The position numbers were made by a program, and so were the translations under genes. The notes below the pieces were generated by a model. The model did no database searches and was not told the DNA's origin. It saw only the letters and a program-made list of their open reading frames with translations. A DNA stretch of 64,000 nt from positions 17,608,001 to 17,672,000 of the forward strand of contig NC_043018.1 in assembly GCF_006345805.1 (NCBI RefSeq), in the 5' to 3' direction. The stretch comes from Octopus sinensis. Its lineage: Eukaryota. The first letter of the stretch is position 1. Each line of letters opens with the position of its first letter. Of this stretch, positions 3,815-64,000 are shown one piece after another.

Positions 3815-4350
<536 letters not shown>

Positions 4351-4934: not shown

Positions 4935-5070
4935 ATTCCGCCGAAGTCGACTTTGCCTTTCATCCTTTCGGGGTCGAAGAATTAAGTACCAGTTGCGTAC
5001 TAGGGTCGATCTAACTGACTCCTCCCCTTCCCCAAAATTTGGGGACTTGTGCCTCGAGTAGAAAAGAATA
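4935..5070 (+). mobile_element. SINE family C body, 5'-truncated, with alternative tail type 2
   Basis: Body attccgccgaagtcgactttgcctttcatcctttcggggtcga...gtaccag shared with 27013-27244; tail ccccaaaatttggggacttgtgcctcgagtagaaaagaat differs. Confidence 0.8.
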
Positions 5071-5275: not shown

Positions 5276-6439
5276 ACCCCTATTTAGAATTCCATAAAAC
5301 ACATAAACGATAGTTATAACCCTTAAACATCGAAGAAAGTGTTGCGTGATTGTGATTGTTAAACAGGCCCCAAAAAACTTTATGGTAATTTTTATAATTA
5401 TTATCCTTTGAAATAGAAGAAAACCATAATAATTGTTAGTCTCACGATACAACAGAAATTTTGCGTGAAAATACCATTTAGTAATATTTCTAATAATGAT
5501 ATTTCAAATATGATAACCATAAAAGATTCTCTAAGACAAATTCACGTGTAGAGATAAATGTCTCTTTAACCAATATCGGCAGAACAGCAGTCGACCTATT
5601 ATCTATAGCAATGTCAATGGTATTTGCCTCGTCAAAACCTCAATCAACATTGGAATAGGAAATCTAAACAGTGACCGTCAACTGAAATTAGTATCTATTG
5701 TTACCCATCAGCATTATTTATTAAAAGCGTTTGTTAGTAATTGGAGTCTTCACAATGTGTGAGTATGTTATTTAAAATCTATAAACGTATACGTCCTTCA
5801 AAGTGTAGTAAGATCTAATTGCTATTGATGTAGGTGATTTCTACCATTCTGGAGTGAGTCGGCCAATTTGAAATGCAATATTGAATTTTTCTTTTTTTTT
5901 TTATACATTTTGAGATAAATTATGCGGATCAAAAAAATTATGAAACTCCATGAATACGTAGCTTGACATTATATGTTACCTAAATTGCAAAGATCACATT
6001 TATTGCGTATAAATTTTTATAAACATAAAGCATTCTCCGTTCTCCCCCCGTAGCAAGTATAAAGACTCCTGTCTGTGTGAGAAATCAATATTTATCACAG
6101 AAAATTTGCATCCAATTCAATTGAAGCCAGGCAAAAATAATTTTATCATATAATGTATTTTTCTTTCGTAAATGGCAAAGAAATATGCTTTTAACTATCT
6201 GGTACACTAGATGTGAATGCTCACTAAAAGATATAATATAACACGACAGAAATACATGACTACATAAAAAACAAACATCTCTTACATTGAAAATGAACTA
6301 CATTTTTATCAACTGACATTTACTTGCCTAATTTATGTTCTTACGCTACTCATACATATGGATTTAGAAAGACATCCTAAATTATGAACGATTAATAAAG
6401 CTATACGTACATATATATACTCACACTCAGTATTACATA

Positions 6440-6766
6440 TGGAAGCACTCCGTCGGTTACGACGATGAGGGTTCCGGTTGATCCGAATCAACGGAACAGC
6501 CTGCTCATGAAATTAACGTGTAAGTGCACCCTTAACGTAGTTCTCGGGGATATTCAGCATGACACAGAGAGTGACAAGGCCGGCCCCTTGAAATACAACA
6601 GAAACAGGAAGTAAGAGTGAGAGAAAGTTGTGGTGAAAGAGTACAGCAGGGATCACCACCATTCCCTGCCGGAGCCTCGTGGAGCTTTTAGGTGTTTTCG
6701 CTCAATAAACACTCACAACGCCCGGTCTGGGAATCGAAACCGCGATCCTACAACCGCGAGTCCGCT
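6440..6766 (-). mobile_element. SINE family A, lacking the A-box end
   Basis: Reverse complement of the 20684-21070 family, ending in gtcgtaaccgacggagtgcttcca. Confidence 0.9.
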
Positions 6767-7801: not shown

Positions 7802-7892
<91 letters not shown>

Positions 7893-10014
7893 TGGAGGAA
7901 AGAAAATAGATGTATGATATGTATGGTTATTGAATTCGTAAATCCGTTTTATAGGCATAAGGGTATATATGTGTATTATTCCAATGTCCTATGAGTAAAA
8001 TGCAAAAGTCCAACAAAGTTTAATATGAGTCCATCCAGATATAGAGTTTATAAGCAATGTAAGATTCTCTTAACGTTGGTCATTCCCAGTAGGGAATTTA
8101 TATAGAGTATAGCAGATTAAATGTTTGTATTTAAAGTGAACTAGAAATAGGGAGTATATTAGTATAGTTAAATTGAAAATAGGATGCGAGGAATGACAAA
8201 ACAAGGGGGCGGAAAAGGAGGAGAGAAAGAAAGATTGAAAGAGAAAGAAGAAAGAAGAATGGTAGAAATTACAAATTACAGTCTGAAATTAGAAAAGAAA
8301 ATATATATATAAGCGCTTGCTTTTGTGAATTTGCCTGTGCCTTCAATTGCGCTATTCCGCTGATTATTTATCTCCCCTCCCATACATATCTAGTGTGTGA
8401 GTAAACCCGTACCGTGTTACAACTGTAGTACTATTTGTATACGCACGACTAGTTTCTTTCGTGTTAAAAAATCGTGCTAAAGAAGCCAGCGATATTATCG
8501 TAAAACTTGTTAGGTCTTTCACTATTTTACTCTAAACACTTTAAATTATTGATATAAAATTGGCCCCAAAATATCAATGCAATATAGATATTATCTGTGT
8601 CATTCCAATACATTTATATTCCATAATAGATGATTATGCGCGGTGCTATCAGATAACGATCTGTTATCTAATTGAAATTTCTTTCACTTTCTACCCACGT
8701 ATTGTTGTCATACCGTTGAACTTTTCTGTCAATATATGTGATTCATATTTTGCTTGCTTAAAAGTATTGCCTGAACGGCTGTAATTTAAACATTATGAAT
8801 TTGATTCAGTTAACTGCGGCTGTATAAGCCATGTCTGCTTTGCATCAAATGATTATTTTAAAAACCTTTACTATTTTCTCCGATCTTAATCTTCTTAAAA
8901 CATGTCTGCGGAGCGAATTTTAGATTTCAACAACATTTAACCTAGGCCATTATCTTTTCTGAAAGGCTAAACCGTGTTTTCGTGAAGAAATAAGAATTCA
9001 CAATTTACAATTTCCCCAAGTTTCGGCCATTGAAATATACGGTGTCATTGAACCATATCTTAAGAGATGTCATTGAAAACGAAATGTGAGCGGAGAAATG
9101 TCAGGTACAGAAATATAGCGATTAAAGCACGACTCTCTTATTTATAGTGAATTGTCTTAAACATTAGATCCGATAAATAATACATGTCTTTCATGGTGAG
9201 ACGTCTTTAACTTAAGCTCAGAGAAGTAAGAAATGCTTTTTAAATAGTTATTTCATGACAGCACCATATGTTCACAAATGTAAACTTTAATTTGGACATG
9301 AAGATAAAATGTGGTTACAAAGATGTACCTAGGAAGATAGATTGTGGTTTCGATAGATAAATAGATTATCAAAGAAAGAAAAGATACGATGGGAAGTTTT
9401 AATAAATAAATGTATTGTATTTTAACTATTTTTCAGTTTCTCGTGTCTGGACATTCGGCAGTCTGATAAAAAAAAATTGGAATACCTGATAGATTTCATT
9501 CTCTAAGTGATATCACCCTATCGAACAACCTCAGAAACATTCGTTATAATTGGTTTGTATAATTTATATTCATCTTTAAACATCACGAAACCTTTGTCAC
9601 ATTAGCATTTCTTTTCTTCCATGTAACGTTGGTAAAATTCACTTTAGCTCTTTTCTCTTAAATGTGGTTTCGTTGCTAATCTCACTACGGATCTGAAGAT
9701 ATTTAATTTCAGAGCTGGTAGATTTTGTTATGTTGTTCTCCATTTGAACTTTACTTTAAACCGCTCACACATGTCACAAAAGTCAATCTGTTCCTGCCGA
9801 TGACGTCTTGTTTTAGGAATGTGGTTTGTCATTTTGGGCAATTTTGGATTTTCTTTGTGAGTTTATGATTTGCTTAACTCAGAATCACAGGTGTCGGGCA
9901 AAAGCGATACAAACAACACTGTAAATAATTACCCTTTACGTCGACTAAGACATTTCGAGATTTTCATTATTAAACTGCTTGTTGGTACATTTGTAGACAG
10001 AGATGGAGAATACC

Positions 10015-10235
10015 TATGTCTTTATTACCCACAAGGGGCTAAACACAGAGGGGACAAACAAGGACAGACACAGGTATTAAGTCGATTACATCGATCCCAG
10101 TGCATAACTGGTACTTAATTTATCGACCCCGAAAGGATGAAAGGCAAAGTCGGAATTTGAACTCACAACGTAACGCAGACGAAATATCGCTAAGCATTTC
10201 GCCCGGCGTGCTAACGTTTCTGCCAGCTCTCCATC
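10015..10235 (-). mobile_element. SINE family C, full length, 17-bp TSD
   Basis: Direct repeat cagagatggagaatacc at 9998-10014 and 10236-10252. Confidence 0.92.
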
Positions 10236-10835: not shown

Positions 10836-11054
10836 ATTCATAATCATTCCAAATATTATGGAGAAATAATCATTTCCATTCTACTAATTCTTCACTAACG
10901 AGGTCAAATGCAGTGTAGATTCTAGGTGTAAATGGAACTTGGGTATAGATTGAGAAATATAAAAGCATTGTCGTCTTATCAGTCGAACTTTCTGCCTTTT
11001 TTTTTGTCACCCACCGCTGTTTCTACAAAGAAATAATTACACACAGCAATTGCA

Positions 11055-11260
11055 GGTAAAATTGATTTCAAATTTTGGCACAAAGCCAGCGATTTCGTGG
11101 ATTGCATCGACCCCAGTAATCAACTGGTACTTATTTTATCGACACCAAAATGATAAAAGGCTATGTTGGACTCGGTGGAATTCGAACTCAGTACGTGAAA
11201 ACGAACAAAATACCGCTAAGCATTTCAGCCGAGGTGCTCGTAATTCTGCCAGCTTTCCAT
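11055..11260 (-). mobile_element. SINE family C, diverged, alternative tail type 3
   Basis: Reverse complement has the family C head and body (agctggcagaa...gagttcgaattcc...aagtaccagttg...gggtcgatgcaatc) followed by ctttgtgccaaaatttgaaatc. Confidence 0.75.
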
Positions 11261-17689: not shown

Positions 17690-17783
17690 AGCCACACTCA
17701 TACACACAGGCACATACACGTGCATATATACATATGCGTGTGCGCGTGAATATATATATATATAATATATATATATATATTAT

Positions 17784-17818
<35 letters not shown>

Positions 17819-17874
17819 GCGTTCACACATAACACAAACATACACGCACTTTGAAAGAGTTGGACAAGTAAATG

Positions 17875-17934
<60 letters not shown>

Positions 17935-17943
17935 TATGGATAA

Positions 17944-17987
<44 letters not shown>

Positions 17988-17993
17988 GCAGAC

Positions 17994-18076
<83 letters not shown>

Positions 18077-18090
18077 CATACAGACATATG

Positions 18091-18167
<77 letters not shown>

Positions 18168-18181
18168 GTAGGTAGGTAGAT

Positions 18182-18216
<35 letters not shown>

Positions 18217-18245
18217 CTGATAGTGAGAAAGACAGACAGATACAC
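17690..18245. repeat. Compound (CA)n/(TA)n/(GATA)n/(GACA)n/(GGAT)n microsatellite
   Basis: Direct reading. Confidence 0.95.
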
Positions 18246-20683
18246 AGATAAATGTATTACACCAGACTTTTAAAGCATGGGCATATGAAAAATCTACGAG
18301 AAGATACATAGTTTAATATAAATATGTGTGTGTGAGTTCGTGTGTGCAAGAGAGTGTGTGTATGTGTGTGTGTGTGTCTGTGTGTGTGTCTGTGTGTGCA
18401 TACACATATGTCAGTGTGTACATCTTTATGTATTCATCGTTAATTGTATCTATTTGCGTTTTCTGTGGATATATTTCTCTTTATTCAGGCATATCAATAT
18501 TACGTGCGTCTGCCACAGTCTACACTGATGCCGCTGTACAAGACATTTCCGCTCTTAATTGTTGTCTCTTTTAATACATACACGACTGAAATAATTAATA
18601 CGGGAGATATAATCCAATACATTTCTGGAATACCATGCTGGAATATACAAGCTCATTAGTTTTCATAAACTGCCATGCTCCACCCTACTCCTACCCGATT
18701 CTTCCCGCAAATACGTATTTCTATTTAATCAATTATTTAATACTACCCTTGCTTCACAACATCAACTTTCTCTATTCAGTGGCTTTCACTCCGATACGAA
18801 TATTCCTTCACATAAAAATAGTTTGCTTCCTTTCTACTTTTCCCGCTTTACATTTACAGATAAATTTGATTTTCGGCAATTCTTGTCAATATGGAAATGA
18901 AGATAATGTCCTCCTATAGCATGAAAGCGTTACTTACAAATTGTATTCCTCCTGAACCTCTCGTTTTAAGCGTTCAATTATGATTTAAGATTAGGAATAA
19001 TTTTATTATTCATGGTTATGGACAAATAAGTCTACCTACGAGTCACAGGACGTTAAGCAATTTTGATATGCCACATTAGAAATAATAGAAAACTATATTT
19101 CTTGAATGAAATTGTATGTGATTTTTCTCGCAGAAAAAGCTTAATGTGTAGAACATATCTTCTTGAGCTTTAAATTTGATCAATACACATTAAATGATAC
19201 ATGAATAGAGAAGCAAATTCGTGTATTTGGGTAGTGTAATCGATAGCTGGAAAATACTGACTTTAGTTTAGCTGTATCCAATGAATAGAGAGGAACAGAA
19301 GACACAATATTTATTTTAACGACCATTGGTCGCACAAATAAATACAAGAGGATAAATGTAACGAGGAGGGTGTTGATATATTTATGGTTTTTAATGTCAT
19401 AAATACACCTTGCTGTCGTTCAACACTTGGAATGGTCGCTGGAAGTCGTTAGAGGTACAAGGTCTAAGCTGAGAAACTGCAAGCAAATACACTCATACAC
19501 ACACACACATACACACACGCAAACACACACGCAAACACACACATAAGAGCGCGCTTACACATATATACGTGCATATGCACACAATCACGTATAATCCAAC
19601 CGGCCATTACATTAAAGCGAAATTTTAAGATTTTACCAGTTTAAGATATTCGTTTTGATTATACAACCCAATGAAAAGAAAATCTGTTGTTCTCTTAAAG
19701 AGTCTTTTATCAAATACATAACAGTGACATACAAGACAGATTTAGCATTCGTTGGTTGCGGAATTGGCGATTTATTTCCACGAACATTATTTTATATTCT
19801 ATGAAATACGTGAAATATATTTGGTGAGCAATCGTAAATCGGTGTAATATGACTCCTCATCAAAGAATGAGCTGCCAATGAAATCGTATTTTATTTATCT
19901 TTTGAAAATCTTTTCTAAGATTAATGTGAGTAATCTTTCGTGTTTAGATATAATTTCAATAGTGTTCGAAGAATATTTCTGTCAGGAATATTGATGTTAA
20001 CACCCAATAACACGACCATAAAATGCATACATGGACGTCGGACTATTCGCACACACAAAGCATATAAAATACATGCATAGTTATAATCACACATACAATT
20101 ATTAGACGTATTCAAACACTAACACACGCAGCTAGTTGGACACACGTTGATATTCACACACATCCAATCGCGCGCACAATCCCGCGAACACGCACACACA
20201 CACACACACATACACACACACACACACACGCACATACACACACAAACGCACACAAAATACGATTGACTCTCACAATCAATTTTGATGAATGGTCACTCAT
20301 TTCTTAGCTAAATTGGACGAACAATTCGCTAAGTTTATGTATGAAGTGGTTGAGTATCTCTCAGCTACAAGTGCCTATATTATAATTCTCACGTAGAATC
20401 AGCGTGATATGCGGTTGGGTCAAAAGTTCAGTTTTTTTCAATTACAGGTACAAGATCCCTTATAGCTTCCGAACGATGCAATTCATTCAGAGAGAGAGGG
20501 ACCGAACCCGAAACTATTGTAGGGATACATGCACCTAAGTTGCTACACGTGGGAACGAAACAAAATCATGGTTGCAAAGGAGAATTGAGGCAACAACAAA
20601 TCCCGTTCAGTTGGAATGTATTGTATTGTTCTGTTTATGTCGAGTATGATTTGGCGGAAATATGGCTGCCTTACATGTTTACC

Positions 20684-23659: not shown

Positions 23660-23890
23660 GGCGGCGAGCTGGCAGAAACGTTAGCACGCCGGGCGAAATG
23701 CTTAGCAGTATTTGGTCTGCCGCTACGTTTTGAGTTCAAAATCCGCCGAGGTCGACTTTCCCTTTCATCCTTTCGGCGTCGATAAATTAAGTACCAGTTA
23801 CGCACTGGGATCGATGTAATCGACTTAATCCGTTTGTCTGCCCATGTTTGTCCCCTCTGTATTTAGCCCCTTGTGGGGAGTAAAGAAATA
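23660..23890 (+). mobile_element. SINE family C, full length, 13-bp TSD
   Basis: ggtataggagtgg at 23649-23661 and 23891-23903; B box gagttcaaaatcc. Confidence 0.92.
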
Positions 23891-24124
23891 GGTATAGGAG
23901 TGGTCTAGTTACCAAATTAGAAGTCTACATATTGGTTACTAACTTAGGGACTAAAATAGCAGAAGGGTAACTAATTATGTTAGCTGTAAAATCTATGAGA
24001 CAAATTTGAGGAAAGTTTTATCACACGAACTGCGGGCCTTCCGTTAAAGCAATATGTTCCACTGAGTTTGTGAACATTCATACCATGTCAAGATTTGAAT
24101 GACCAAACTAATATAAACCAGTGT

Positions 24125-26574: not shown

Positions 26575-27640
26575 TGTTGTTCTTTTCTAAATATTCTAGC
26601 AATTCCAAGGAATGTTGTTTTCGTAAGTGCCCCACCCTCGTGTTTTCCTCAATTTTTGAAAAAACTAGTTTTCAAATCTGATGCTCACAGTACCAAGCGT
26701 CCCAACAACCGCAACCACTTCCACCGTTTCCATTGACCACAAATGTCCTATCTCCCATGAGAGTACTCCATACCTCTCAATCCTCAATTCTTTGTCAGTT
26801 GGAAAAGCCACATCAATCACCATAATATATGGTTTGTGATGTTCAGATTAATTGTCACATGGTTCCATAAAATCTTAGAATGGTCCGTTTCTTCAATGTC
26901 TTCTGTTTTTTCCTCATAGCATTTATTTACTCTTTCAAGACCATATCTTCTGCATAGAACGATTTTCGCAACACTGTCATGGCGTCGTTGGTATTCTTTC
27001 CGTATACCATAAGGCGGTGAGCTGGCAGAAACGTTAGCACCCCGGGCGAAATGCTAAGCGGTATTTCGTCTGCCGTTACGTTCTGAGTTCAAATTCCGCC
27101 GAGGTCGACTTTGCCTGTCATCCTTTCGGGGTCGATAAATTAAGTACCAGTTACGCACTGGGGTCGATGTAATCGGCTTAATACCTATGTCTGTCCTTGT
27201 TTGTCCCCTCTGTGTTTAGCCCCTTGTGGGTAGTAAAGAAATAAGTATTCTTTCCGTGTCAGCTTTGAGTAATGGCTGGTGATATGCCACACACTTTCTC
27301 GTTTTCCTCTACATATCCTATATTCTTCCACTGCACCTGATTCGTCAATGTTGCACTTAACATGGTTTGTTCTTGTGCTGCACAAGAATTTCAGCACTTC
27401 AATCAATTTCGTTGTCTCCTGGTTTCGCTTCCATCCATCAACACTTCTTCTGTTGCACAGTGCTTTTGTTCCTCTGTAAATCTTTCGTCTTCATTCGCAT
27501 TTATCTAAAGGCCAGCATCCCAATGCGGCGCATCAGAAGCAGCTTCGCTTTCAGTTCATTCATTTGTCACATTTCGATCTTCTCCGTTCTCAGCTTCTTC
27601 AAATATTTCCCCCGTATTCTAATTAACTCATGTAATTAAA
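26575..27640 (-). mobile_element. R4/Dong-like (RLE-type) non-LTR retrotransposon remnant, C-terminal region, interrupted by a SINE
   Basis: Minus translation TNHVKCNIDES...YRICRGKRESVWHITSHYSKLTRKEY|QRRHDSVAK...LCRRYGL...SKILW matches the zinc knuckle/RHD/KILWD region preceding the restriction-like endonuclease. Confidence 0.8.
27013..27244 (+). mobile_element. SINE family C, full length, 13-bp TSD, inserted in the R4/Dong remnant
   Basis: gtattctttccgt at 26991-27003 and 27245-27257; removing the insert restores EYQRRHD. Confidence 0.93.
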
Positions 27641-27854
27641 TCAAGGAACCTTCTAGTTAACTCAGATTCTATGTCATTCACTTAACCATTCCTTCTAATT
27701 CTAATTCTAATTCTAATTACCTCACAAATTCACAGATAATGATCCAAACATTCCCCCTTCCTTCCAATGCCCCTTTTCTCTGATTGCCCTTTCATTTTCC
27801 TCATTAGTGTTACTCGCGAGGGAACAAGTCATAACTACGACATTCACTTGTTTA

Positions 27855-28262
27855 GGCGGCGAACTGCCAGAAACGTTAGCACGCCGGGCTAAATGCGTAG
27901 CCGCATTTCATCTGCCGTTACGTCGTGAGTTCAAATTCCGCTGAGGTCGACTTTGCCTTTCATCCTTTCGGGGTCGATATATCCTTACGCACTCGGGTCG
28001 ATATAATCGACTTAATCCATTTTCTGTCCTTGTTTGTCCTATCTGTGTTTAACCCCTTGTGGGTAGTAAAGAAACAGGTACTGTGTCAGTCGATACGTTC
28101 TGAGTTCAAATTCTGCCAAGGTCTACTTTGCCTTTCATCCTTTCGGGGTCGATAAACTAACTACCAGTTTCGGACTGGGGTCGATGTAATTGACTTAATC
28201 CGTTTGTCTGTCCTTGTTCATCCCCTCTAGGTTTAGCCTTCTGTGGGCAATAAAGAAAAAGA
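27855..28262 (+). mobile_element. Tandem SINE family C (full unit plus headless unit)
   Basis: Unit 1 27855-28076; unit 2 restarts at ggtac (28077), equivalent to the internal ggtat site. Confidence 0.85.
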
Positions 28263-28378
28263 ACATACACTTGTTTGCTCCAGCTCAGTCTTGCTTGTTG
28301 GCTAGCAGATGCTGGTTGACGACTGCTTCCTCCCTAGTGCACAACGAGACACGTTTCGGACGTGGTACATTCATCATA
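28263..28378. repeat. Unclassified ~115-nt dispersed repeat, also at 63501-63618
   Basis: About 6 mismatches over ~110 nt between the two copies; both directly follow tandem SINE C. Confidence 0.85.
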
Positions 28379-28745
28379 GTGATGCGAAAGTGCGATGATT
28401 TTGTCGGGGTCAACGAAGACGAACTGTCAAATAGTTTGGAGATCTGTCAAGCAGGGGACTACAATAGATAATTTGCAAAAGTACTTGGCTTGACTGTGAT
28501 ACTGAAGGGTGCACCCAGATCGAGATAAACTCTTCAGGCATGGAAGTGTATTCGAACGGGCTCCCCCGAAAGGTGCGCAAAGTGGCGTCACACATGTGTC
28601 TATGTATTGTAATCATACGATTCAAGTGTATGCCTTTACACAGTTTTAAGTACACTGAATAGAATGTTATGTATGTATATTTAAAGATGCGTATGAGGGT
28701 GTGTATACAGAAGTATATTTATGTGCCACTGTATATTGCACATTG

Positions 28746-29085: not shown

Positions 29086-29386
<301 letters not shown>

Positions 29387-31628
29387 GTGTGAGGCCTTTC
29401 AGCAGCATTTTGCCCGACTGTTCGGAACGAGTGGAGGGCAAGAACGTAGGGTGGACTTCAGTGCCTACCTACATAGCCTACCACGACTCTCGACAAGAAA
29501 GGCGGGTGCTGCGAAGGTGCCATCACGGCGACGGAAGTGCGGGAAGCGATGGCAGAATGCTCGAGGGACAAATCACCGGGTTTGGATGGTCTACCCTACG
29601 AGCTTTACAATTGTATGCCAGACTTGTTTGGAGATCTCTTGGCGGCGGTGTACTGCAACTGGCAGCAAAACGGGAGCATTCCTGGTTTTGTGAGCCGAGG
29701 AGCCGTAACACTGCTGAAGAAAGATCTAAACAAGGGAATGTAATAGATAACTTTAGGCCATCACTCTGCTTAATGCAGACTTGAAAATTTTGGCCAGGGT
29801 GCTAGCCAAGAGGTTGGCGCTTGTCATCGAGAAACTGGTCGACAAGGCGCAAACGTGCGCCGTGCCAGGCCGGACCATCCATGAAACCTCCATCTGATGC
29901 GCTACATCATAGACAGGGTAGTTAACGAACCTGGCATGGTGGGGCCCTGATCAACTTGGATCAATCGAAAGCCTTGATAGGGTAGACCATCGATACTTGG
30001 AGGCAGTCCTGAGAGCGGATGGTTTCGGTCCCGTCTTCCGCGGCTGGATAGCTGCCTTGTACAGAGGCATCCGTTCGGTAATTCGCGTAATGGACATCTA
30101 TCGAGACCTTTCGACATTGCACGTTCGGTCCGTCAGGGATGCCCCCTCTCGGCGCTTCTATACGTATTGACTCTTGAGCCACTACTGCGGAAGCTGGCGA
30201 CTCTAAGGGGCATCCCGCGAGAATTGGGATGCGGGACGAGCGTGTCTGCATACGCGGACGACGTCACCGTCATAGTGTCTAGCCACGAGCACATCGAGCT
30301 GGTCGGCGAGACACTGAAAAACTACGAGCGGTGACAGGAGCGAAAATCAACCGGGAAAAGTCAGTGGGCTTGCGACTAGGCACCTGGAGAAGCAAGCCCA
30401 TGCCGTCCACCAGCGCCTCCGTCGTGGGACGCTGGACCGACGGCCCGGTTGAGTTGCTCGGGGTCTGGTTCGGTCCGGACCTCCAAGTGGAGAAGAACTG
30501 GAACGAGATAACGAGTAGGGTGGTCACTCTCGCCGGCAATGGGCCGAGAGGAACTGTCCCTAAAAGGGTCGAGCGGAGGTGACGAACACGTACATCGCGT
30601 CCGTCATCTACTACCGCCTGACCGTCGTACCTTGTCCCGACCCTACCATCACAAACTACAACGCATCCTCTTTCGCTTCTTGTGGAAAGGATGCGTCCGA
30701 TGGTCAGGCGATCCATTTGCTGTCAACACCCGTTAAAAGGAGGGCTGGGCATGCCGTGGTTGATGATGCGCAGACACGCGCTGAGACTGCGACATCTCTG
30801 GCTCTATGTAGACGACGGTGAACAGGTGTGGTCGCCGTTTGTGAGGCACGCTTTCCCGCAGCTCGTCTCCATGACCGAACTGCAGTCGTGGATCAAAAAG
30901 AGGCCGAGGAAGGGCGAATGGCACCGCGAGTGTCGCGTTGCTCTCAAGCAACTCTGCCGTGCCTTGGTCGACCTTACGTGACTTCACCACAACCAAAGCA
31001 TTCTATAGGGGTTTAGTGGAGGGGAGGTACGACGACGAGCCGGGGCGAAACCTGGACGTCGACGAGGAGTACCTGACCCGCCTGTTCGGGACGACTTTCG
31101 GCCAGGGCCCATGGACAACTTCCAGAGATCCCTGGCCTGGCAGTGCTACCGAGAAGCGCTACCCGTTCGGGATAAGCTCTACAGACACGGCTCGAGAAAC
31201 ACGGGGCCGACCTGCCGAGATGCGGTCAGAGCGACGAAACCGTTCTGCACGTACTCGTTCAGTGTCCAACAATTTCCGACCTGTGGGCTTATGTCGAACA
31301 ACTGCTGTCACGTGTGGGACGAGTCGGTTTATCAGCTGAGTCTATCGTCATATTGTCACGCCTCCTTCCTTCAAACGGGAAGGAAGAGCTATTTTCATCA
31401 TCCCTGTGGCTATGGCGAAAGAAGTATTGGTGGACGCGTCTGAAAGGATTGGAGACAAACACTTTCCTCTCTGGTCAATCTCTCATCAACTTCTTCAAGT
31501 ACCACTTGAAAAGGAAAGTGAGAGTAGAGAGGCAAGTTTTGTCTAGCGAATGTTTTAAAAAAAGATGGGTGAATGTAGCAAGAATGGCACGTATGAATGA
31601 CGAAGCCACCTTGAGCATAGTCCTATGA
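29387..31628 (+). pseudogene. Reverse transcriptase (ORF2) of the Tx1-type LINE, frameshifted in this sequence
   Basis: Contiguous RT-thumb-zinc knuckle protein recoverable across multiple 1-nt frameshifts; stop at 31628. Confidence 0.88.
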
Positions 31629-32011
31629 ACCCAGAATCGAAAACAGAGAGTTGCTTATTTGCAAAAAAGAAATATAAAATGTGACTTCATTGACCGAGGT
31701 TACGTGGTCTTTTCCGTAGGCTTTTCTTTCCACGGGTAAACCTCACCTGTCCTCCCCTTTACACTTCATATTGACATTTCTGTGATAACGATCCCTATTG
31801 ATCAATTTTTTTTTCCTCTCCCCTTTATTTTTTTAATTTTTTTTTTAACCCCCCCCCCCCTTTTAATTTGTCCTCTTTCTCTCTTTTACGATCCCTTTTG
31901 ATCGAAACTCCCCCTCCTTTTTTTTTTTTTTTTTTTAAACCTTCAAAAGAAAAGCTCTACCTTGTAATTTGTTCTATCTGTGTGCAGCCCTGTGTGGCTA
32001 ATAAAGAAACA
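29387..32011 (+). mobile_element. L1/Tx1-type non-LTR retrotransposon, 5'-truncated within ORF2
   Basis: GC-rich block with RT motifs KSPGLDGLPYELY, NFRPITLLNADLKILARVLAKRL, LDQSKAFDRVDH, VRQGCPLS, YADD (30251-30262), GAKINREKS; C-terminal CPRC...HVLVQCP knuckle; pyrimidine-rich 3'UTR ending aataaagaaac. No endonuclease domain or ORF1. Confidence 0.93.
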
Positions 32012-32700
<689 letters not shown>

Positions 32701-33699: not shown

Positions 33700-34440
33700 A
33701 CGAAAGAGGCGAAAATTGATTACGTTAACGTTAAAGAAGATGTATCACTGACCATTGATGGGGTTGATACAAATTCTGGCCCTGATGGGTTCCCAGCAAT
33801 CCTCCTCAAATCGTGCAAACGAGCCTTTGCAAATCCACTACAGCTTCTTTTTCATAGCATTTTACAAGTGGCAAGTTCTCAGACATACAAAGTGAAGGAA
33901 TAATATGCCTTATCCACAAATGAGGAAGTAGAGTAGATGCTAAAAATTATTGGTCTATCTCTCTGATCTCACACATAAGCAAAGGCCTGGAGCGAATAAT
34001 CCGCATGGAATTAATCGCGTTCCTTGCTGACTGACACCTATCATGGACTTTGACCAGGTGAAAGCTGACTAACACAGCTCTTACATCATTACAAGGCGTT
34101 AAAGCAGCTGCTAAATGATTCAACCGTGGATGCGATATATTTCTTGCAAAGGCTTTTGATAAAGTCGAAAATAGTATGATATATCACACTCCGCCGAGGT
34201 CGACTTTGCGTTTCATCCTTTCGGGGTCGATAAATTAAGTACCAGTTAATCACTGGGGTCGATATAATCGACTTAATACCTATGTCTGTCCATGTTTGTC
34301 CCCTCTATGTTTAGCCCCTTGTGGGTAATAAAGAAATAAGTATGATATATCACACTCTGCGGGTCTTCCGCGTAGTCGGGAAACTTGGAGAGTGGCTACA
34401 CGACCTTCAAATGATGGTATAGTACAGCAAACGGTGGTGC
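33700..34440 (+). mobile_element. CR1/L2/Jockey-group LINE RT remnant, interrupted by a SINE
   Basis: GPDGFPAILLKSCKRAFANPLQLLF...IICLIHK*GSRVDAKNYWSISLISHISKGLERII...KAFDKV...VGKLGEWL; multiple stops and deletions. Confidence 0.8.
34192..34338 (+). mobile_element. SINE family C, 5'-truncated, 19-bp TSD
   Basis: agtatgatatatcacactc at 34173-34191 and 34339-34357. Confidence 0.93.
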
Positions 34441-51570: not shown

Positions 51571-53998
51571 TGTACATAGATGTTTGAAAAATTACATGTA
51601 CAGGTAAAAATATACGTACATAAACATTTACGTGTATAGTAAATATTTTTGCATGCTCAAGTTAATGTATAGTCTTGCTCTGTTATATTATATTTATATT
51701 CAATTTTTGGCCTTTTTTTTGTAGATATTTTTAATCAAATCATTATTAAACGAAACCTCAGCAACTGAGTCTAAATGCACTCGACTATATTCTTACTTTC
51801 ATTTCCCCCGTAAGTGCCTCTTGCGATCCACGTCTTTTACAAAGGAGCAGCAAATGAAGAGGGAGCGGCTCTTATGTATTATCATGCTCATAGAGAGAGC
51901 AAACAAATCCCAACCAAATGCCTTCGTTGTTTCTCAGTAAAGAGTAGGGCCTATTAGCGAATGAAGTTTGGGATATTCTATGCTTGAAGAAAGAGGTTCC
52001 GATATGCGGTACTTGAATCACTTCGGTCATATTTGAATTTTAACAGTAAAGAACCAAACATTAGATACATATGTTTCTTGACAAATTAAATTAATAGCCA
52101 TATTTCTCTGACGTCATTCTCACATATGGGCAGCCAAAGACAGGACTATCAGCTGATTGGTGGATTTTTAGTCCAATCTTGACTATAATAAATGATTATT
52201 ATAATCAATAATCATTTATTGATTATACGCAATAAATGATTAGATATATTTATCTGTACACTGAGAGGATTATATATACATCTATCATACGCTATTTGGA
52301 TTAACGTCTCTTCTCTTAACACACAATAAGTTCGAAAAAAAATACTAAATATGGTTTGAAAGTAAGTCAATCCTACGTGGCCAATGGAATTTTGTGTTTC
52401 AAGCAAGATACTTCCAGTTGCTGTTAGGCTGATGCATATTTTTCAACCCAATCAATCACACGTCCTGTATTGGTACTAATACTCCTGTCCATAAGGAGCA
52501 CATGACCTGAAATGTGAGGGGAAGGGGTTATTTGTTTGCGTTGATTGGTTGATTGGTTGATTGGTGTTCAATTGGTATTTGTTTCATTGATCACGAAAGA
52601 ATGTAAGTCAAAGTCGACCTCGGTGGGATGTTTGGTACCAATATTAACACGAGCTTGTAAACTTTATGCTATAATTCTTGTTCTGAAACTAGCCCTGTTG
52701 CCTATCGCTGTGCCATTTACATACAGACGTCAATACATATCGCCTTGGAAAGCCTCTTAACACTAATATATGTATTGTGTGTGTGTTGTGTGTGTGTGTG
52801 TGTGCCTACCAACCTGTATGTGAATGTGCTTGTGAGTGTATGGAGAGATGGATGGATGGGTGGATGATAAATTTTTCCCATACCAATGTACAGTTTGTAA
52901 AAATGAAGGCCAAAAAGTGACATTGTATCTATAGAACAAATGATAGCAGGGGAGATAATCAAGCAACAACGGCCGATTAGAAACACTTTCTCTCTGCTAC
53001 TTCCTCGGCTTACAGAACAACTGATACCATTCAACAATATTACAAGCATGGAACCCCCTGAATGTTCAATTATTTCTAATTACTAATGAAAGCCTTAATG
53101 AGGTGGTTGATTTGTAGCTGTCACAGCCTACAGAAACAGACATTTCTATAACAGCGAGGTAATGTCGTAAAGACACTGAGATTTTTGACGGCTCTTACAT
53201 TTTCATTTCATTGGAAATTACAACCGTGAATAGAACATTTGTGTCAAGCACATCTTGTTAATTGTCGCCGTATCATGTATCCTGTCAGAGACCAGCTTAG
53301 TGTGGGATTGTTTGTTTTCTATTATGGTTTGTATTAATTATTCAGATATGCGTGTCGTAAAGGAGTGATTGCCTTTTCTGCAAGCTGTCACGCTGTCATG
53401 CTGTTAACAATCCTATGTTGGAATCTCTTCCCGGAGTTCTCATAAAAACAATTCACACGATATAATCCTATCTTTCCTGAGAAGATACAATACTCTGCGA
53501 GAATATATTTGTTTTGTTTTCGCGTTGTATCGTTTTCTTTTAGTGAGATAGTTAAACGTGTTGGCTGAGTTGCTAAAATGTGGAAATTGAACACTTTGAG
53601 ATTTTTTCATTGCAGCTCCTGAACTCAGAGCTTAAATATCGCTGAAGTCGACTTCGTCTTTCTTCATTTCAAACTCTATAAATAACGTAGCCCTTTCAGA
53701 CTGGAATCGATTCTCTTCTGTTTCTCTGTGAATAATTTCTCTAAGAAATCATCTCCAGTTATACTTTGTAAGGGACGGGCTCCACGAAGTCTAAAAATAC
53801 CTGACCTATAATATATTCCACGATGGCATCCATAATTATTCTTTCAACAGGTAAGGGCCCAAGGCAACGCAAGACAAAAATATAACATGAATGAATTATA
53901 TGTTGCGAGAACAATTACTGATTCAGTCTTCACAGGAAACTCTGTGAATTCCTATTTCCCAAAAGTGAGACCAGAATTTAAAATTCCGTAGTCAAATG

Positions 53999-61544: not shown

Positions 61545-61740
61545 TCGGAGGCCGGACATAATGTTTAGCAGCATCTCGTCCGTCCTTGCATTCTAAGTTC
61601 AAATTCCGCCAAGGTAGAGTTTTACCCTTCATTCTCCCAGGGTTGATAAAATAAGTACCAGTTGAGCACAGGGGTCAATGTGAACGACTAGCTACTCTTC
61701 AAGAATTTCAGACTTTGTGCATATAACAGAAAAGGGTTAT
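61545..61740 (+). mobile_element. SINE family C, old diverged copy with non-Tx1 tail
   Basis: aagttcaaattccgccaagg...gataaaataagtaccagttgagcacaggggtcaatg, then tttgtgcatataacagaaaaggg. Confidence 0.65.
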
Positions 61741-61749
61741 TCAAATATA

Positions 61750-62075
61750 TAAGGTGTCCCTGAAGTCACTGATAGGTTTCAATTTTTAATAAGTTCACTG
61801 CATTGTTTCTCTTCTGGTACGAGTAGTTGCCCCCTCATGCTGGGACCATGTGTGAGGTCTACTTTGAATGGCCATCAGTTCCCCAGACTTGATTAGCCCG
61901 TATTTTTCTTGTAATGTTACCTGAAAGAGAGAGTTTACGTCAACAAACCTGAGATCTTTGTGCAACTGATGGAGGACATCAATCAATAGAGAAATCAGAG
62001 TGCACGGGCGTGCGAAGCCGAAAATGGCTGCCATTTAAGCGATATCATTTTTCATATCTGCTGTAGAGCTGTTGC
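61750..62075 (+). mobile_element. Tc1-like remnant
   Basis: WPS(R)SPDLISPYFFL*CYLKERVYVNKPE matches WPxRSPDLxPxDFFLWGYLKxxVY; ggtgtccc TIR-like start. Confidence 0.7.
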
Positions 62076-63014
62076 AGAATTTGGCTCGTGTATATTAATT
62101 TCCATTACGTCCTTTATATTGCATCAAACTTTCATGCATATATTTCTAAATTTATGCAAGTTATTAAAAATTGAAACCCGTCAGTGACATTTAGGACAAA
62201 TTGTATTACGCTTAAAGTATATGACTTTACGTGAAATCTTTTCGATCTGCGAGTAGTTGCCGGTATTTGTGTCTGATGTTACGTCGATGGAATTAGCAAA
62301 GATTATATATTGAATATGACTGCTAATATTAGAAGGGGAGAACATGAATATGCGAATCATTTAGTTCTATATGTAAGTGAAAATGATGCTTCTGTCTGTT
62401 CAGAGAAATGACGGCTAAAAATACTTAAACTATATTCCATACTTTGTGTGGTATGAAGCTGGAATAACATCGCTCTTGAATAATCATATGATTAGAAATT
62501 TTAGTTGTGCTTTCAGTTTTGTTCGTCATTGTTGATATTTTATCAACGATATAGTGACGTTTTTTGAAGAATGGATATTTAATAACGCCTATTATTATTC
62601 CAACATCGTTCCTATTGATGATATCTTTTTACCCCTCTCCAAAATAACCATCCATTAGAATAAATTTTAATATTTCCATATAAAATAGAATACAATTTGT
62701 CAAAATCTTCATGGAGCCATATTTGAAAGACGAAAGTGAAGGTCACTCTTGTTTCATTGTCAGATTAACGAGCGAACACATCCCGTCATTCTGCCATTCG
62801 ACTCAAACGTATAATCAAAATATGCAAATGCATTCAAAAATAACCCAAAATCTTCATACAGAGATGGCGTAAAAGAATGTTACCAACAAAGCAACATTTT
62901 GAAGTGCGTATAAAGCTGCGGCTACAATAACAAAATATCAATTTCTCTTACATTACTTCCATTTTTATTCGGCTCTCACGTTAACCAATTTGAATTAGAA
63001 TCTACATATTTTAA

Positions 63015-63500
63015 GGCGGTAAGCTGGTAGAAACGTTAGCACGCCGGGCGAAATTCTTTGCGGTATTTCGTCTGCCGCTACGTTCTGAGTTCAAATTCCG
63101 CCGAGGTTGACTTTGCCCTTCATCCTTACGGGACCGATTAAATAAGTACCAGTTGCTCACTGAGTGGATATGATCAACTTAATCCGTTTGTCTGTCCTTG
63201 TTTGTCCTCTCTGTGTTTTTCTCCAAGTGGGTAGTAAAGAAATAGGTATTTCGTCTGCCGCTACGTTTTGAATTCAAATTCCGCCGAGGTCGACTTTGCC
63301 TTTCATCTTTTCGGGGTCGATTAAATAAGTACCAGTTATGCACTGGGGTCGATATAATCGACTTAATCCGTTTGTCCTCTCTGTGTTTAGCCCCTTGTGG
63401 GTAGTAAAGAAATAGGTATTTCGGCTGTTTACGTTCTGGGTTCAAAATCCGCCGTGGTCGACATGGCTTTTATCCTTTCTGTTGGCAATAAAGAAAAAGA
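63015..63500 (+). mobile_element. Tandem SINE family C (one full plus two headless units)
   Basis: Units restart at ggtatttcg at 63245 and 63415, identical to the internal site at 63062. Confidence 0.9.
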
Positions 63501-63618
63501 AACATTCACGTGTTTGCTCCAGCTCAGTCTTGCTTGTTGGCTAGCAGATGCTGGTTGATGACTGCTTCCTCCCTACTGCACAACGAGACACGTTACGGAC
63601 GTGGTACTTTCACCATTG
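63501..63618. repeat. Second copy of the ~115-nt repeat seen at 28263-28378
   Basis: Direct sequence comparison. Confidence 0.85.
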
Positions 63619-64000
63619 TTAATAAATTCACGACGTTATTTAGAACTTTATCTGTATTTCGCCTAGAGTAGAAAAGAAAAAAATATAGATTGATTAAAAT
63701 ATGCAAATGTTTGTGATTCACTCTTCTTTTTCTTTTGTATTATTAAATTCTATTTTATTTTACATTTTCTGTTTGCTTTATATATAATTTAAATTCAGTT
63801 TTATATATTTCTTTGTAGTCATATATACAAAGATATACACACAAGAGCGCACAGAAACCCGTGTTAGTGTATACATTTAATATCGTTTGATATATGTATG
63901 TTTCTGCGAAGTAGATAACTGGAGAATTCCTAAGGTAGAATATAAATCTGTGAGAGTTAAACTCCAAAAGATAATTATTGGGTGAATGATGGAATTTGGA

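What the first reader, a model, noticed from the sequence alone, without database searches (positions are those of the whole stretch)
31960..32010. Tx1/L1-type LINE and the abundant SINE family C share their 3' ~50 nt (candidate SINE-LINE partner pair)
Seen: LINE end ccttgtaatttgttctatctgtgtgcagccctgtgtggctaataaagaaac aligns to the SINE C tail ccttg---tttgtcctatctgtgtttaaccccttgtgggtagtaaagaaac (28028-28075) at 40/48 identities with one 3-nt gap. Similarity stops upstream of this block. Established: stringent LINEs recognise a 3' tail that partner SINEs borrow (typical of L2, CR1, RTE), whereas L1-type enzymes usually act via poly(A). Inference: this SINE is mobilised by a Tx1/L1-type RT through tail recognition, an uncommon pairing. 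The long (13-19 bp) TSDs of SINE C fit an L1/Tx1-type endonuclease.
Basis: partly seen in the sequence, partly recalled or inferred. Interest (0 to 1): 0.78.

Follow-up and report, generated by a model that had tools for sequence, protein, structure and literature searches.

The report
Octopod SINE borrows Tx1-like LINE tail
The last ~50 bases of a decayed L1/Tx1-type retrotransposon in this octopod DNA are its own conserved hairpin-bearing end, and the abundant short repeat "SINE C" carries the same end, so the SINE most likely hijacks that LINE's enzyme, a rare kind of pairing for L1-type elements.

Summary
Window 31960-32010 aligns to the SINE C tail at 40/48 identities with one 3-nt gap. 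The local alignment score is 40, against 18.5±2.5 for shuffles.

The block is not a SINE fragment lying behind the LINE. It is the true 3' terminus of a 5'-truncated, frameshifted L1-group LINE (29387-32010) that sits inside an (ATCT)n microsatellite. Independent copies of the same LINE family carry the same terminal module. These come from Argonauta hians (three 3' ends) and from a JGI metagenome, an ENA assembly and Logan contigs. The rest of their 3'UTRs has diverged.

The module contains a 4-bp stem with a CUUGU loop just upstream of AAUAAAGAAAU. The stem keeps pairing through compensatory changes in 15 tails (95% paired against 70% for shuffles), including LINE relatives only ~45-50% identical in protein.

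Argonauta has its own SINE, whose tail matches the Argonauta LINE tail at 36 of 37 positions plus one gap. No copy ends in poly(A). SINE target-site duplications are 13-19 bp and start with (G)TAT or (C)TAT.

Best reading: stringent, tail-recognising mobilisation of octopod SINEs by a Tx1-like LINE. Tx1 placement rests on indirect evidence; no RT phylogeny could be run. I found no report of this pairing in the searchable literature.

The parts
29387..32010 (+). 5'-truncated, frameshifted L1/Tx1-type LINE copy. It covers ORF2 from about residue 430 of a ~1160-aa ORF2 to the stop, plus the 3'UTR.
   Evidence: Three-frame translation shows RT motifs and the C-terminal CCHC across several frameshifts. 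Pfam RVT_1 scores 2.4e-30. tblastn with L022 ORF2 and P0001 maps to 29492-31598. This is the only L1-group fragment in the window.
31626..31628 (+). ORF2 stop codon (TGA)
   Evidence: An ORF ends at 31628. The position is collinear with the stops of L001, L002 and L003.
31629..32010 (+). LINE 3'UTR (382 nt)
   Evidence: It is collinear along its length with the 3'UTR of L031, a copy of the same subfamily from another sample. That alignment runs to the L031 contig end, which falls inside the tail block.
31960..32010 (+). Shared LINE/SINE tail module (the finding)
   Evidence: 40/48 identity to the SINE C tail. It is the only 3'UTR segment conserved with the Argonauta LINE, at 91% over 33 nt.
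31986..31999 (+). Core hairpin: AGCC (31986-31989), loop CTGTGT (31990-31995), GGCT (31996-31999)
   Evidence: The MFE fold contains this stem. The same helix in 15 other tails is 95% paired with compensatory changes.
31977..32008 (+). Extended imperfect hairpin: the 5' arm UCUGUGU pairs with the 3' arm AAUAAAGA around the core stem
   Evidence: MFE folds of the window LINE tail and the Argonauta LINE and SINE tails, and of L025 with z = -3.7. There are only one-sided changes here, so support is weaker.
29086..29386 (.). (ATCT)n microsatellite abutting the LINE 5' truncation point
   Evidence: TRF reports 75.8 copies.
32012..32624 (.). (TATC)n microsatellite starting 1-2 nt after the LINE end
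   Evidence: TRF reports 154.8 copies.
27855..28080 (+).
27013..27247 (+). SINE C copy closest to the consensus (96.5%), with a 13-bp TSD GTATTCTTTCCGT
23660..23894 (+). SINE C copy with a 13-bp TSD GGTATAGGAGTGG
10011..10232 (-). SINE C copy with a 17-bp TSD GGTATTCTCCATCTCTG
34184..34342 (+). 5'-truncated SINE C copy with a 19-bp TSD AGTATGATATATCACACTC

Best explanation
Window 31960-32010 is the authentic 3' terminus of an old, 5'-truncated L1-group (Tx1-like) LINE. This LINE lineage ends in a conserved RNA module. The module is a short stem with a CUUGU loop (RGCC-CUUGU-GGCY), embedded in a longer imperfect hairpin in which UCUGUGU pairs with AAUAAAGA. It is followed by GAAAU and a few terminal bases or a short AT-rich repeat, and never by poly(A). 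SINE C is a ~235-bp element with a tRNA-like head, a body and then a tail that is a copy of this module.

Inferred mechanism:
- The LINE's ORF2 protein recognises the hairpin module in trans on SINE RNA. This is 'stringent' recognition of the kind shown for L2, CR1 and RTE partners.
- The endonuclease nicks AT-rich targets just before (G/C)TAT.
- The nicked strand anneals to the last few bases of the template and primes reverse transcription.
- Second-strand cleavage 13-19 bp downstream produces the long TSDs.

Shown here: the homology of the tails, the tail's ownership by the LINE family, conservation of the hairpin with compensatory changes, the absence of poly(A), and the TSD lengths and start motif.

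Inferred, not shown: protein-RNA recognition, trans-mobilisation, and the direction of borrowing (LINE to SINE).
For: (1) Significant tail identity: 40/48, z about 8.7.

(2) The tail belongs to the LINE. It is present at the extreme 3' end of independent copies in Argonauta hians (L001 ~6250-6285 and 6612-6650; L024 ~4130-4185), in L002, in L025-28, and partly in L031. The rest of these 3'UTRs is barely alignable.

(3) The SINE C consensus matches the L024 LINE end even better than the window LINE. The local score is 49 with z = 13.3 over 54 nt.

(4) Lineage-specific co-variation. The Argonauta SINE tail TTCTGTGTTCGGCCCTTGTGGCTAATAGAGAAATCTAT matches the Argonauta LINE tail TTCTGTGTCGGCCCTTGTGGCTAATAAAGAAATCTAT at 36 of 37 positions plus one gap, including the terminal CTAT.

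(5) Hairpin conservation. In 15 tails the 4-bp helix is 95% paired, against 70.5% for shuffles and 22-55% for slid controls. Three of the four pairs show double-sided changes (CG 9 / GC 6; GC 12 / CG 2 / AU 1). The loop C(T/C)TGT is almost invariant. A version of the hairpin is also present in LINE relatives only ~45-50% identical in protein (L004, L022).

(6) No copy of either element ends in poly(A).

(7) Four of four independent SINE C TSDs are 13-19 bp and begin (G/A)GTAT or GTAT. Four of four Argonauta SINE TSDs begin (C)TAT. LINE ends are followed by TAT- or ATT-type sequence.

(8) The RT is L1-group.
Against: - No experiment links the protein to the tail.
- The window LINE copy is old and its terminal bases (…GAAAC ATATCTAT) differ from SINE C's (…GAAAT AGGTAT). 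The actual source subfamily of SINE C, expected to carry GGGTAGTAAAGAAATAGGTAT, was not found in the data I could reach.
- Hairpin covariation rests on few independent events, because the sequences fall into two or three related groups. The stem is only 4 bp, and MFE z-scores for single tails are mostly weak (-0.1 to -2.3).
- The LINE's own TSD cannot be read because it lies in a microsatellite.
- Clade placement (Tx1 or L1) is indirect.
- Other LINE clades present in octopus genomes (RTE, CR1, Dong-R4; PMC13282606) could not be screened for a similar tail.
Confidence: 0.75

Rival explanations
1. The block is a fragment of SINE C, or a 5'-truncated SINE insertion, that happened to land directly behind the LINE. 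On this reading the LINE itself has no such tail.
For: 5'-truncated SINE C copies exist in the window (34184-34342). The window holds only one LINE copy.
Against: At least six independent LINE 3' ends, from Argonauta and from four other samples, carry the module at the same place. These are L001 (two ends), L024, L002, L025 and L031. The L031 UTR is collinear with the window UTR right into the block. The LINE version differs consistently from SINE C (GGCT against GGGT, AATAAA against AGTAAA).
Confidence: 0.02
2. The tails are homologous, but the module is a 3'-end processing signal rather than an RT recognition element. On this reading AAUAAA plus a hairpin directs cleavage/polyadenylation or transcript stabilisation, and the SINE is mobilised in a relaxed, poly(A)-dependent L1 manner, like the T+ SINEs B2, Dip and Ves.
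For: A canonical AATAAA (AGTAAA in SINE C) sits 5-11 nt from the end of every tail. T+ SINEs with AATAAA exist (PMC8466645, title and abstract listed).
Against: No genomic copy of the LINE or the SINE has an A-tail. Copies end 5-11 nt after AATAAA and the TSD starts at once. The AAUAAAGA stretch is predicted to be base-paired with UCUGUGU. The TSD start motif equals the terminal bases of the element and is not A-rich.
Confidence: 0.08
3. The tail similarity is a relic or was taken from a third source. On this reading a different LINE clade with a similar hairpin end (RTE, CR1 or Dong-R4) actually amplified SINE C, or the LINE captured its end from the SINE.
For: SINEs exchange tails often (PMC5786205, PMC4824008). 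Several LINE clades are active in octopus (PMC13282606). I could not screen those clades.
Against: The hairpin is present across LINE relatives at ~45-50% protein identity (L004, L022), so it is old in the LINE lineage. Argonauta SINE and LINE tails are nearly identical, which argues for ongoing matching rather than a relic. The 13-19 bp TSDs fit an L1-group APE endonuclease; that link rests on my own knowledge and was not tested here.
Confidence: 0.12
4. The match is chance similarity between two T-rich, low-complexity ends.
For: The block is T/G-rich and only ~50 nt long.
Against: z is about 8.7-13 against shuffles. There are 6 pattern hits against 0 expected. The same module recurs in a second genus.
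Confidence: 0.01

Closest known systems
UnaL2 / UnaSINE1 (eel, L2 clade): the experimentally proven stringent SINE-LINE pair (Kajikawa & Okada 2002, as cited in PMC3747384)
   Same: The SINE and the LINE share only the last ~50-60 nt. The shared part contains a conserved stem-loop followed by a few terminal bases or a short repeat and not poly(A). The LINE RT is presumed to recognise the tail in trans.
   Different: The clade differs (L2 against L1/Tx1-like), and so do the hairpin sequence and the terminal repeat ((TGTAA)n there). Mobilisation was shown by assay there and is only inferred here.
[quoted passage not shown]
   Same: An L1-group LINE whose conserved 3' end forms a hairpin with compensatory changes, and SINEs of the same genome share that end. 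Both show that L1-group enzymes are not always 'relaxed'.
   Different: Those are plant and algal lineages and end in poly(A). The octopod elements are animal, Tx1-like, lack poly(A) altogether and show a (G/C)TAT target signature.
SINEU mobilised by Tx1-Mar in crocodilians (Kojima 2015, PMC4494074)
   Same: A SINE is assigned to a Tx1-clade LINE. Shared insertion-site preference is used as evidence.
   Different: SINEU has snRNA-derived heads. The passage on SINEU-1's shared 3' sequences shown breaks off mid-sentence, so whether any LINE matches its 3' part is not stated in the text I read. The link reported there rests on a common target (Mariner-N4_AMi). Here the link is a shared, structured 3' tail.
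Microsatellite-targeting Tx1 families (Kibi (TC)n, Koshi (TTC)n, crocodilian Tx1 in (TTCC)n/(TTTC)n; PMC4494074)
   Same: The window LINE is embedded in (ATCT)n on both sides. L002 and L024 are followed by (ATT)n.
   Different: The repeat units differ. With only 3-4 junctions, specificity is not established. The repeats could instead be 3' terminal repeats made by RT slippage.
Human L1 / Alu (relaxed, poly(A)-dependent)
   Same: An L1-group APE+RT enzyme (best PDB match), long TSDs, and likely primer-template annealing at the nick.
   Different: No poly(A). There is a specific shared tail sequence. ORF1 is of the CCHC-knuckle type rather than Transposase_22.

Membership tests
Stringent-type SINE/LINE partner pair (shared 3' tail) | The SINE 3' end is homologous to the 3' end of the LINE 3'UTR, and only there | tested here: met
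   40/48 identity, z about 8.7, and no similarity upstream. z = 13.3 against the Argonauta LINE L024.
Stringent-type SINE/LINE partner pair (shared 3' tail) | The tail is an integral, conserved part of the LINE family and not a secondary insertion | tested here: met
   Present in L001 (two ends), L024, L002, L025-28 and L031. It is the only conserved 3'UTR block.
Stringent-type SINE/LINE partner pair (shared 3' tail) | A conserved stem-loop in the tail, supported by compensatory changes | tested here: met
   The 4-bp helix is 95% paired against 70.5% for shuffles. Three of four pairs have double-sided changes and the loop is nearly invariant. There are few independent events and the stem is short.
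Stringent-type SINE/LINE partner pair (shared 3' tail) | SINE and LINE co-occur and their tails co-evolve within a lineage | tested here: met
   Both occur in the window and both in Argonauta hians. Argonauta SINE and LINE tails match at 36 of 37 positions plus one gap, including the terminal CTAT.
Stringent-type SINE/LINE partner pair (shared 3' tail) | The same insertion-site signature (TSD length, target motif) for SINE and LINE | tested here: inconclusive
   SINE TSDs are 13-19 bp and start (G/C)TAT. LINE 3' junctions are followed by TAT or ATT sequence, but no LINE TSD could be read, because the copy is in a microsatellite or the 5' ends are missing.
Stringent-type SINE/LINE partner pair (shared 3' tail) | Tail-dependent trans-mobilisation by the LINE's ORF2p | not testable with these tools
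   Needs a retrotransposition assay.
L1 group of non-LTR retrotransposons (L1 + Tx1 clades) | ORF2 with an N-terminal APE endonuclease, an RT, and a C-terminal CCHC (zf-RVT) domain | tested here: met
   The window copy has RVT_1 and a CCHC motif. The relative L022 ORF2 has Exo_endo_phos + RVT_1 + zf-RVT. P0001-P0005 carry PF00078 + PF13966.
L1 group of non-LTR retrotransposons (L1 + Tx1 clades) | The RT is closest to L1-group RTs | tested here: met
   PDB phmmer gives human L1 ORF2p at 7e-43 against R2 at 1e-22. No CR1, L2 or RTE structures exist for comparison, so this is a weak test.
Tx1 clade specifically | The RT groups with Tx1 references in a phylogeny (for example RTclass1) | not testable with these tools
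   No named Tx1 reference could be retrieved. The nearest diverse relatives are unnamed or are molluscan hypothetical proteins from Patella and Solemya. Indirect support: tree-based studies place molluscan L1-group LINEs in Tx1 (PMC10294476), and octopus ones are labelled L1-Tx1 (PMC13282606, PMC8967140).
Tx1 clade specifically | Type-I-like ORF1 (RRM and/or CCHC knuckle) rather than Transposase_22 | tested here: met
   zf-CCHC is present in the ORF1 of relatives L004 (4e-5) and L022 (weak, below the Pfam cutoff), with no Transposase_22 hit. PMC5203782 describes this pattern as consistent with Tx1. It was tested only in ~45-50%-identical relatives and not in the window family.
Tx1 clade specifically | Target-specific insertion | tested here: inconclusive
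   The window copy lies inside (ATCT)n. L002 and L024 are followed by (ATT)n. L022 and L004 form head-to-tail arrays. There are too few junctions to decide.
tRNA-derived SINE | A short, non-coding, multicopy element with a defined 5' end and TSDs | tested here: met
   About 235 bp, nine copies or fragments, and four clean TSDs.
tRNA-derived SINE | [quoted passage not shown] | tested here: inconclusive
   Box-like motifs (TGGCAGAAACG; GAGTTCAAATTCC) are visible in the consensus. ARAGORN and Rfam call nothing.
Relaxed, poly(A)-dependent L1 mobilisation (Alu-like) | A 3' poly(A) tail on the SINE and the LINE | tested here: not met
   None of the SINE or LINE ends examined, in the window or in the loci, has an A-tail.

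The most novel reading that the evidence does not exclude
Octopod Tx1-like LINEs combine stringent hairpin recognition with an RNA-encoded 'address'. On this reading the last 4-6 template bases after GAAAU (AGGUAU in Octopus SINE C, CUAU in Argonauta, AUCU or AUU repeats in LINE copies) pair with the nicked target and so choose the insertion site. A SINE could then retarget itself simply by mutating its terminal bases. The same LINE lineage would then have driven the octopus-specific SINE expansion (SINEs are ~12% of the O. vulgaris genome). This would be the first animal L1-group lineage shown to be stringent, and it would support Ohshima's idea that stringent recognition is ancestral in the L1 group.
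Probability: 0.25. Interest if true: 0.72.

Novelty: new member of a known kind. Interest (0 to 1): 0.5.

Why it matters
SINEs are the largest repeat class in Octopus genomes, at about 11.6% of O. vulgaris (PMC13282606) and ~40% of the TE content (PMC8967140). Almost all of the recently active SINE families tabulated for O. vulgaris are 'unclassified' (893 of 900). The octopus and cephalopod repeat papers I could search name no LINE partner for them.

A tail shared with a Tx1-like LINE names a candidate driver for that lineage-specific expansion. It also gives a concrete, small RNA element of about 35 nt to test.

More generally, L1-group LINEs are the textbook 'relaxed' enzymes. [quoted passage not shown] An animal Tx1-like lineage with a structured, poly(A)-less shared tail bears on whether stringent recognition is ancestral in the L1 group. 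It would also be a natural system for studying how an L1-type ORF2p can read a specific RNA.

Tried and rejected
- **Metagenome protein scan.** I queried metagenome contigs with the ORF2 C-terminus. No relative was found.
- **Metagenome tail-pattern scan.** I scanned metagenome contigs for CCYTTGTGGSYARTARAGAAA. It gave 16 loci (L006-L021). All are chance 21-mers in what appear to be microbial contigs, with no SINE or LINE context.
- **Rfam and ARAGORN.** Rfam at gathering and E-value thresholds, and ARAGORN, were run on the window and on a SINE copy. No tRNA or family call came back, so the tRNA species of the head is undetermined.
- **Full-text search for SINE core strings.** It returned only unrelated primer hits.
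- **SINEBase supplement.** Not held, so I could not tell whether SINE C equals the published octopus SINEs OK, OR1 or OR2. The octopus genome paper was not held either.
- **Source names for clade placement.** Three cluster look-ups and a 1.8-billion-protein representative search returned no Tx1 or L1 names. The only named organisms were molluscs (Acanthosepion pharaonis, Patella caerulea, Solemya velum), each attached to a generic or hypothetical protein name.
- **SINE-SINE junctions as two independent template switches.** I first read the two tail-to-position-48 junctions (28075/28077 and 63243/63245) this way and rejected it. The two arrays are paralogous composites that share ~150 bp of downstream sequence, so they count as one event.
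- **Other SINE families as partners of the L004/L022-type LINE tail.** The families at 4935, 11254 and 61551 give only weak support (z 3.4-4.7 for one copy, not significant for the others). I kept this as a passing note.
- **Loci that do not reach the tail.** L023, L029 and L030 add nothing.

Full report
**What is there**

The window is octopod (cephalopod) DNA. The best protein relative of the LINE is an Argonauta hians protein at 67% identity.

Window 29387-32010 (+) is a 5'-truncated LINE with many frameshifts. Stitching the three reading frames gives RT motifs and the C-terminal CCHC motif. Pfam RVT_1 scores 2.4e-30. tblastn with a full-length 1161-aa relative maps the copy to ORF2 residues ~430 to the end. 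ORF2 stops at 31626-31628, followed by a 382-nt 3'UTR that ends …GGCTAATAAAGAAAC at 32010. The copy lies inside a microsatellite, with (ATCT)n at 29086-29386 and (TATC)n at 32012-32624. There is no poly(A).

**The observation**

- A local alignment of the whole 3'UTR against the SINE C consensus finds only this terminal block. The score is 40, against 18.5±2.5 for shuffles with a maximum of 28.
- A 35-nt degenerate pattern hits 6 times, against 0 expected.
- SINE C is a ~235-bp repeat with nine copies or fragments in the window, 88-96% identical to their consensus.
- Four independent copies have clean TSDs of 17, 13, 13 and 19 bp.

**Whose tail is it?**

The key alternative was a SINE fragment parked behind the LINE. 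I tested it by fetching other copies of the LINE family.

- **Argonauta hians, L001.** The ORF ends at 6013. The 3'UTR ends …TTCTGTGTCAGCCAGGTGGCTAAGAAAGAAAT at ~6285. Downstream lies a separate, 230-bp 5'-truncated copy ending …TTCTGTGTCGGCCCTTGTGGCTAATAAAGAAATCTAT at 6650.
- **Argonauta hians, L024.** A second locus ends …GTCCCCTCTATGTTTTTGCCCTTGTGGCTAATAAAAGAAATAATTATTATTATTAT.
- **L002, a JGI metagenome contig.** It ends …GGGCCCTTGTGGCCAATAAAAGAAATC followed by (ATT)n.
- **L025-28, Logan contigs.** They end …TTTGTTTAACCCTTGTGGTTTGAATAAA at the contig end.
- **L031, ENA.** This is the same subfamily as the window copy. Its 3'UTR is collinear with the window UTR right into the first half of the block, where the contig stops.

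Between the window LINE and the Argonauta LINE, blastn aligns the ORF at 67% and then nothing in the UTR except the last 33 nt at 91%. The multiple alignment shows the same pattern. The tail is therefore an integral part of the LINE and is under selection. The SINE C consensus matches the L024 LINE end even better than the window LINE, with a score of 49 and z = 13.3 over 54 nt.

**A second genus**

Argonauta has its own SINE. It shares the body core (…TCGATAAAACAAGTACCAG…) with SINE C but has a different head. Its tail, TTCTGTGTTCGGCCCTTGTGGCTAATAGAGAAATCTAT, matches the Argonauta LINE tail at 36 of 37 positions plus one gap, including the terminal CTAT. SINE and LINE tails therefore track each other within each lineage. 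This is what a working partnership predicts.

**Structure**

All the tails contain a 4-bp stem around a C(T/C)TGT loop, just upstream of AATAAAG. The observed stems are:

- GGCC/GGCC in L002
- GGCC/GGCT in Argonauta
- AGCC/GGCT in the window LINE (6-nt loop)
- GCCC/GGGT in SINE C
- AACC/GGTT in L025
- GGC/GCC, AGGC/GCCT and GGGC/GCCC in the more distant relatives L004 and L022 (~45-50% protein identity)

On a gap-free alignment of 15 tails, the helix is 95% paired. Column shuffles give 70.5% and slid partners give 22-55%. The covariation score is 0.636 against 0.185. Three of the four pairs show changes on both sides (CG 9 / GC 6; GC 12 / CG 2 / AU 1).

MFE folds place this stem inside a longer imperfect hairpin in which UCUGUGU pairs with AAUAAAGA. 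That would explain why both flanks of the block are conserved in SINE and LINE, and it suggests the AAUAAA acts as structure rather than as a poly(A) signal.

Caveats: the stem is short, the sequences fall into a few related groups so independent events are few, and single-sequence z-scores are mostly modest.

**Insertion signature**

No SINE or LINE copy ends in poly(A).

- The four SINE C TSDs begin GGTAT, GGTAT, GTAT and AGTAT.
- The Argonauta SINE TSDs begin CTAT, CTAT, TAT and TAT.
- LINE ends are followed by ATATCTAT… (window), CTATTTTT (L001) and (ATT)n (L002, L024).

Because the upstream TSD copy also carries these bases, the targets themselves had them. I read this either as an endonuclease preference for N|(G/C)TAT, or as annealing of the nicked strand to the last template bases, or both. 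This part is inference.

**Clade**

- The best solved-structure match is human L1 ORF2p at 7e-43, against R2 at 1e-22.
- Relatives have APE + RT + zf-RVT, and an ORF1 with a CCHC knuckle and no Transposase_22 domain. PMC5203782 describes this as the Type-I-like pattern consistent with Tx1.
- The nearest diverse relatives in a 1.8-billion-protein search are unnamed, or are molluscan hypothetical proteins from Patella and Solemya.

Evidence from the literature:

- Tree-based work places molluscan L1-group LINEs in Tx1 (PMC10294476).
- Octopus annotations list only L1-Tx1 for this group (PMC13282606, PMC8967140).
- Many Tx1 families target microsatellites (PMC4494074), which fits the (ATCT)n and (ATT)n contexts seen here.

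I could not run an RT phylogeny with named references. 'L1 group' is therefore tested, and 'Tx1' is likely but indirect.

**Comparison with what is known**

Tail sharing with stringent recognition is well established for L2, CR1 and RTE partners; the eel UnaL2/UnaSINE1 pair is the proven case.

For the L1 clade it is rare. [quoted passage not shown] The two partner LINEs, LINE1-1_ZM and L1-1_CR, are classed there as stringent and end in poly(A) repeats (PMC3472496).

For Tx1, crocodilian SINEU was assigned to Tx1-Mar on the basis of shared target preference and not a shared tail (PMC4494074).

Bivalve SINE partners reported so far are CR1, CR1-Zenon, L2 and Nimb (PMC11481361).

Almost all recently active O. 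vulgaris SINE families are listed as 'unclassified' (893 of 900), and I found no named partner in the text I searched (PMC13282606).

My searches found no report of a Tx1-like tail shared with cephalopod SINEs.

**Verdict**

- It is filed as a new member of a known kind, namely a stringent SINE-LINE pair, in an unusual clade and taxon.
- Mobilisation itself and the Tx1 label remain to be shown.

Noticed in passing
window 27851-28380 and 63011-63619: Two paralogous composite repeats. Each is a full SINE C joined tail-to-position-48 to a 5'-truncated SINE C, followed by ~150 bp of shared non-SINE sequence (92% identical). The 63-kb locus has one extra partial unit. The SINE-SINE junction falls at an internal GGTAT of the SINE, the same bases that follow the tail. 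This could reflect an RT template switch between two SINE RNAs, but it counts as one event and not two. At the 28-kb locus the array is flanked by ACAT(T/A)CACTTGTTT on both sides.
   Followed up: partly
window 4935-5070 (+), 11050-11254 (-), 61551-61750 (+); fragments at 52570-52629 and 53625-53711: Other SINE-like families share SINE C's head and core (…GGGTCGATAAAnnAAGTACCAG…) but have different tails. Two of these tails contain a GGC-(C/T)TTGT-GCC hairpin and a CCCCAAAA stretch that resemble the 3' ends of the more distant LINE relatives L004 and L022. The similarity is only weakly significant (z 3.4-4.7 for one copy). It may mean that several SINE families partner with several Tx1-like sublineages.
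   Followed up: partly
L022 1-14200; L004 1-8169: The related full-length LINEs (ORF1 ~750-770 aa or 401 aa with a CCHC knuckle; ORF2 1155-1161 aa) sit in head-to-tail tandem arrays. L022 has three successive 3' ends, at ~395, ~7325 and ~14200. The two upstream 3' ends (~395 and ~7325) have identical junction sequence (…AAATAAAGAACTCAGGAGCCAAGTGG…); the third (~14200) differs. This suggests site-specific insertion or array formation. The source species are unknown (ENA ERZ21867824, ERZ26052130).
   Followed up: no
window 29086-29386, 32012-32624; also ~17700-18300: Very long (ATCT)n/(TAGA)n microsatellites of 300-600 bp. One is split by the LINE. A (CTAT)n run also follows a SINE end in Argonauta (L001 ~8120-8190, minus strand). 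It is unclear whether these are insertion targets or grew from LINE and SINE 3' ends.
   Followed up: partly
window 30001-31000: The LINE coding region is 58% G+C, against a background of about 33%. It is the most G+C-rich kilobase of the window.
   Followed up: no
L001 ~7880-8020 (minus strand) and L024 ~5700-5850: These are short 5'-truncated elements in Argonauta that carry the tail module (GGGCCCTTGTGGCCGATAAAAAAATCATGATT; …GGCCCTTGTGGCTAATAAGAAATCG with a 17-bp TSD TTATTTGCTAGCTGG(C/T)C) but no SINE core. They are probably 5'-truncated LINE 3'UTRs of other subfamilies.
   Followed up: no
window 27013-27110 (SINE C head): The head folds into a long, stable hairpin-like structure (-38.7 kcal/mol, z = -2.1) rather than a cloverleaf. 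Neither ARAGORN nor Rfam recognises it, although A-box-like and B-box-like motifs are visible. Its RNA-gene origin is unresolved.
   Followed up: partly
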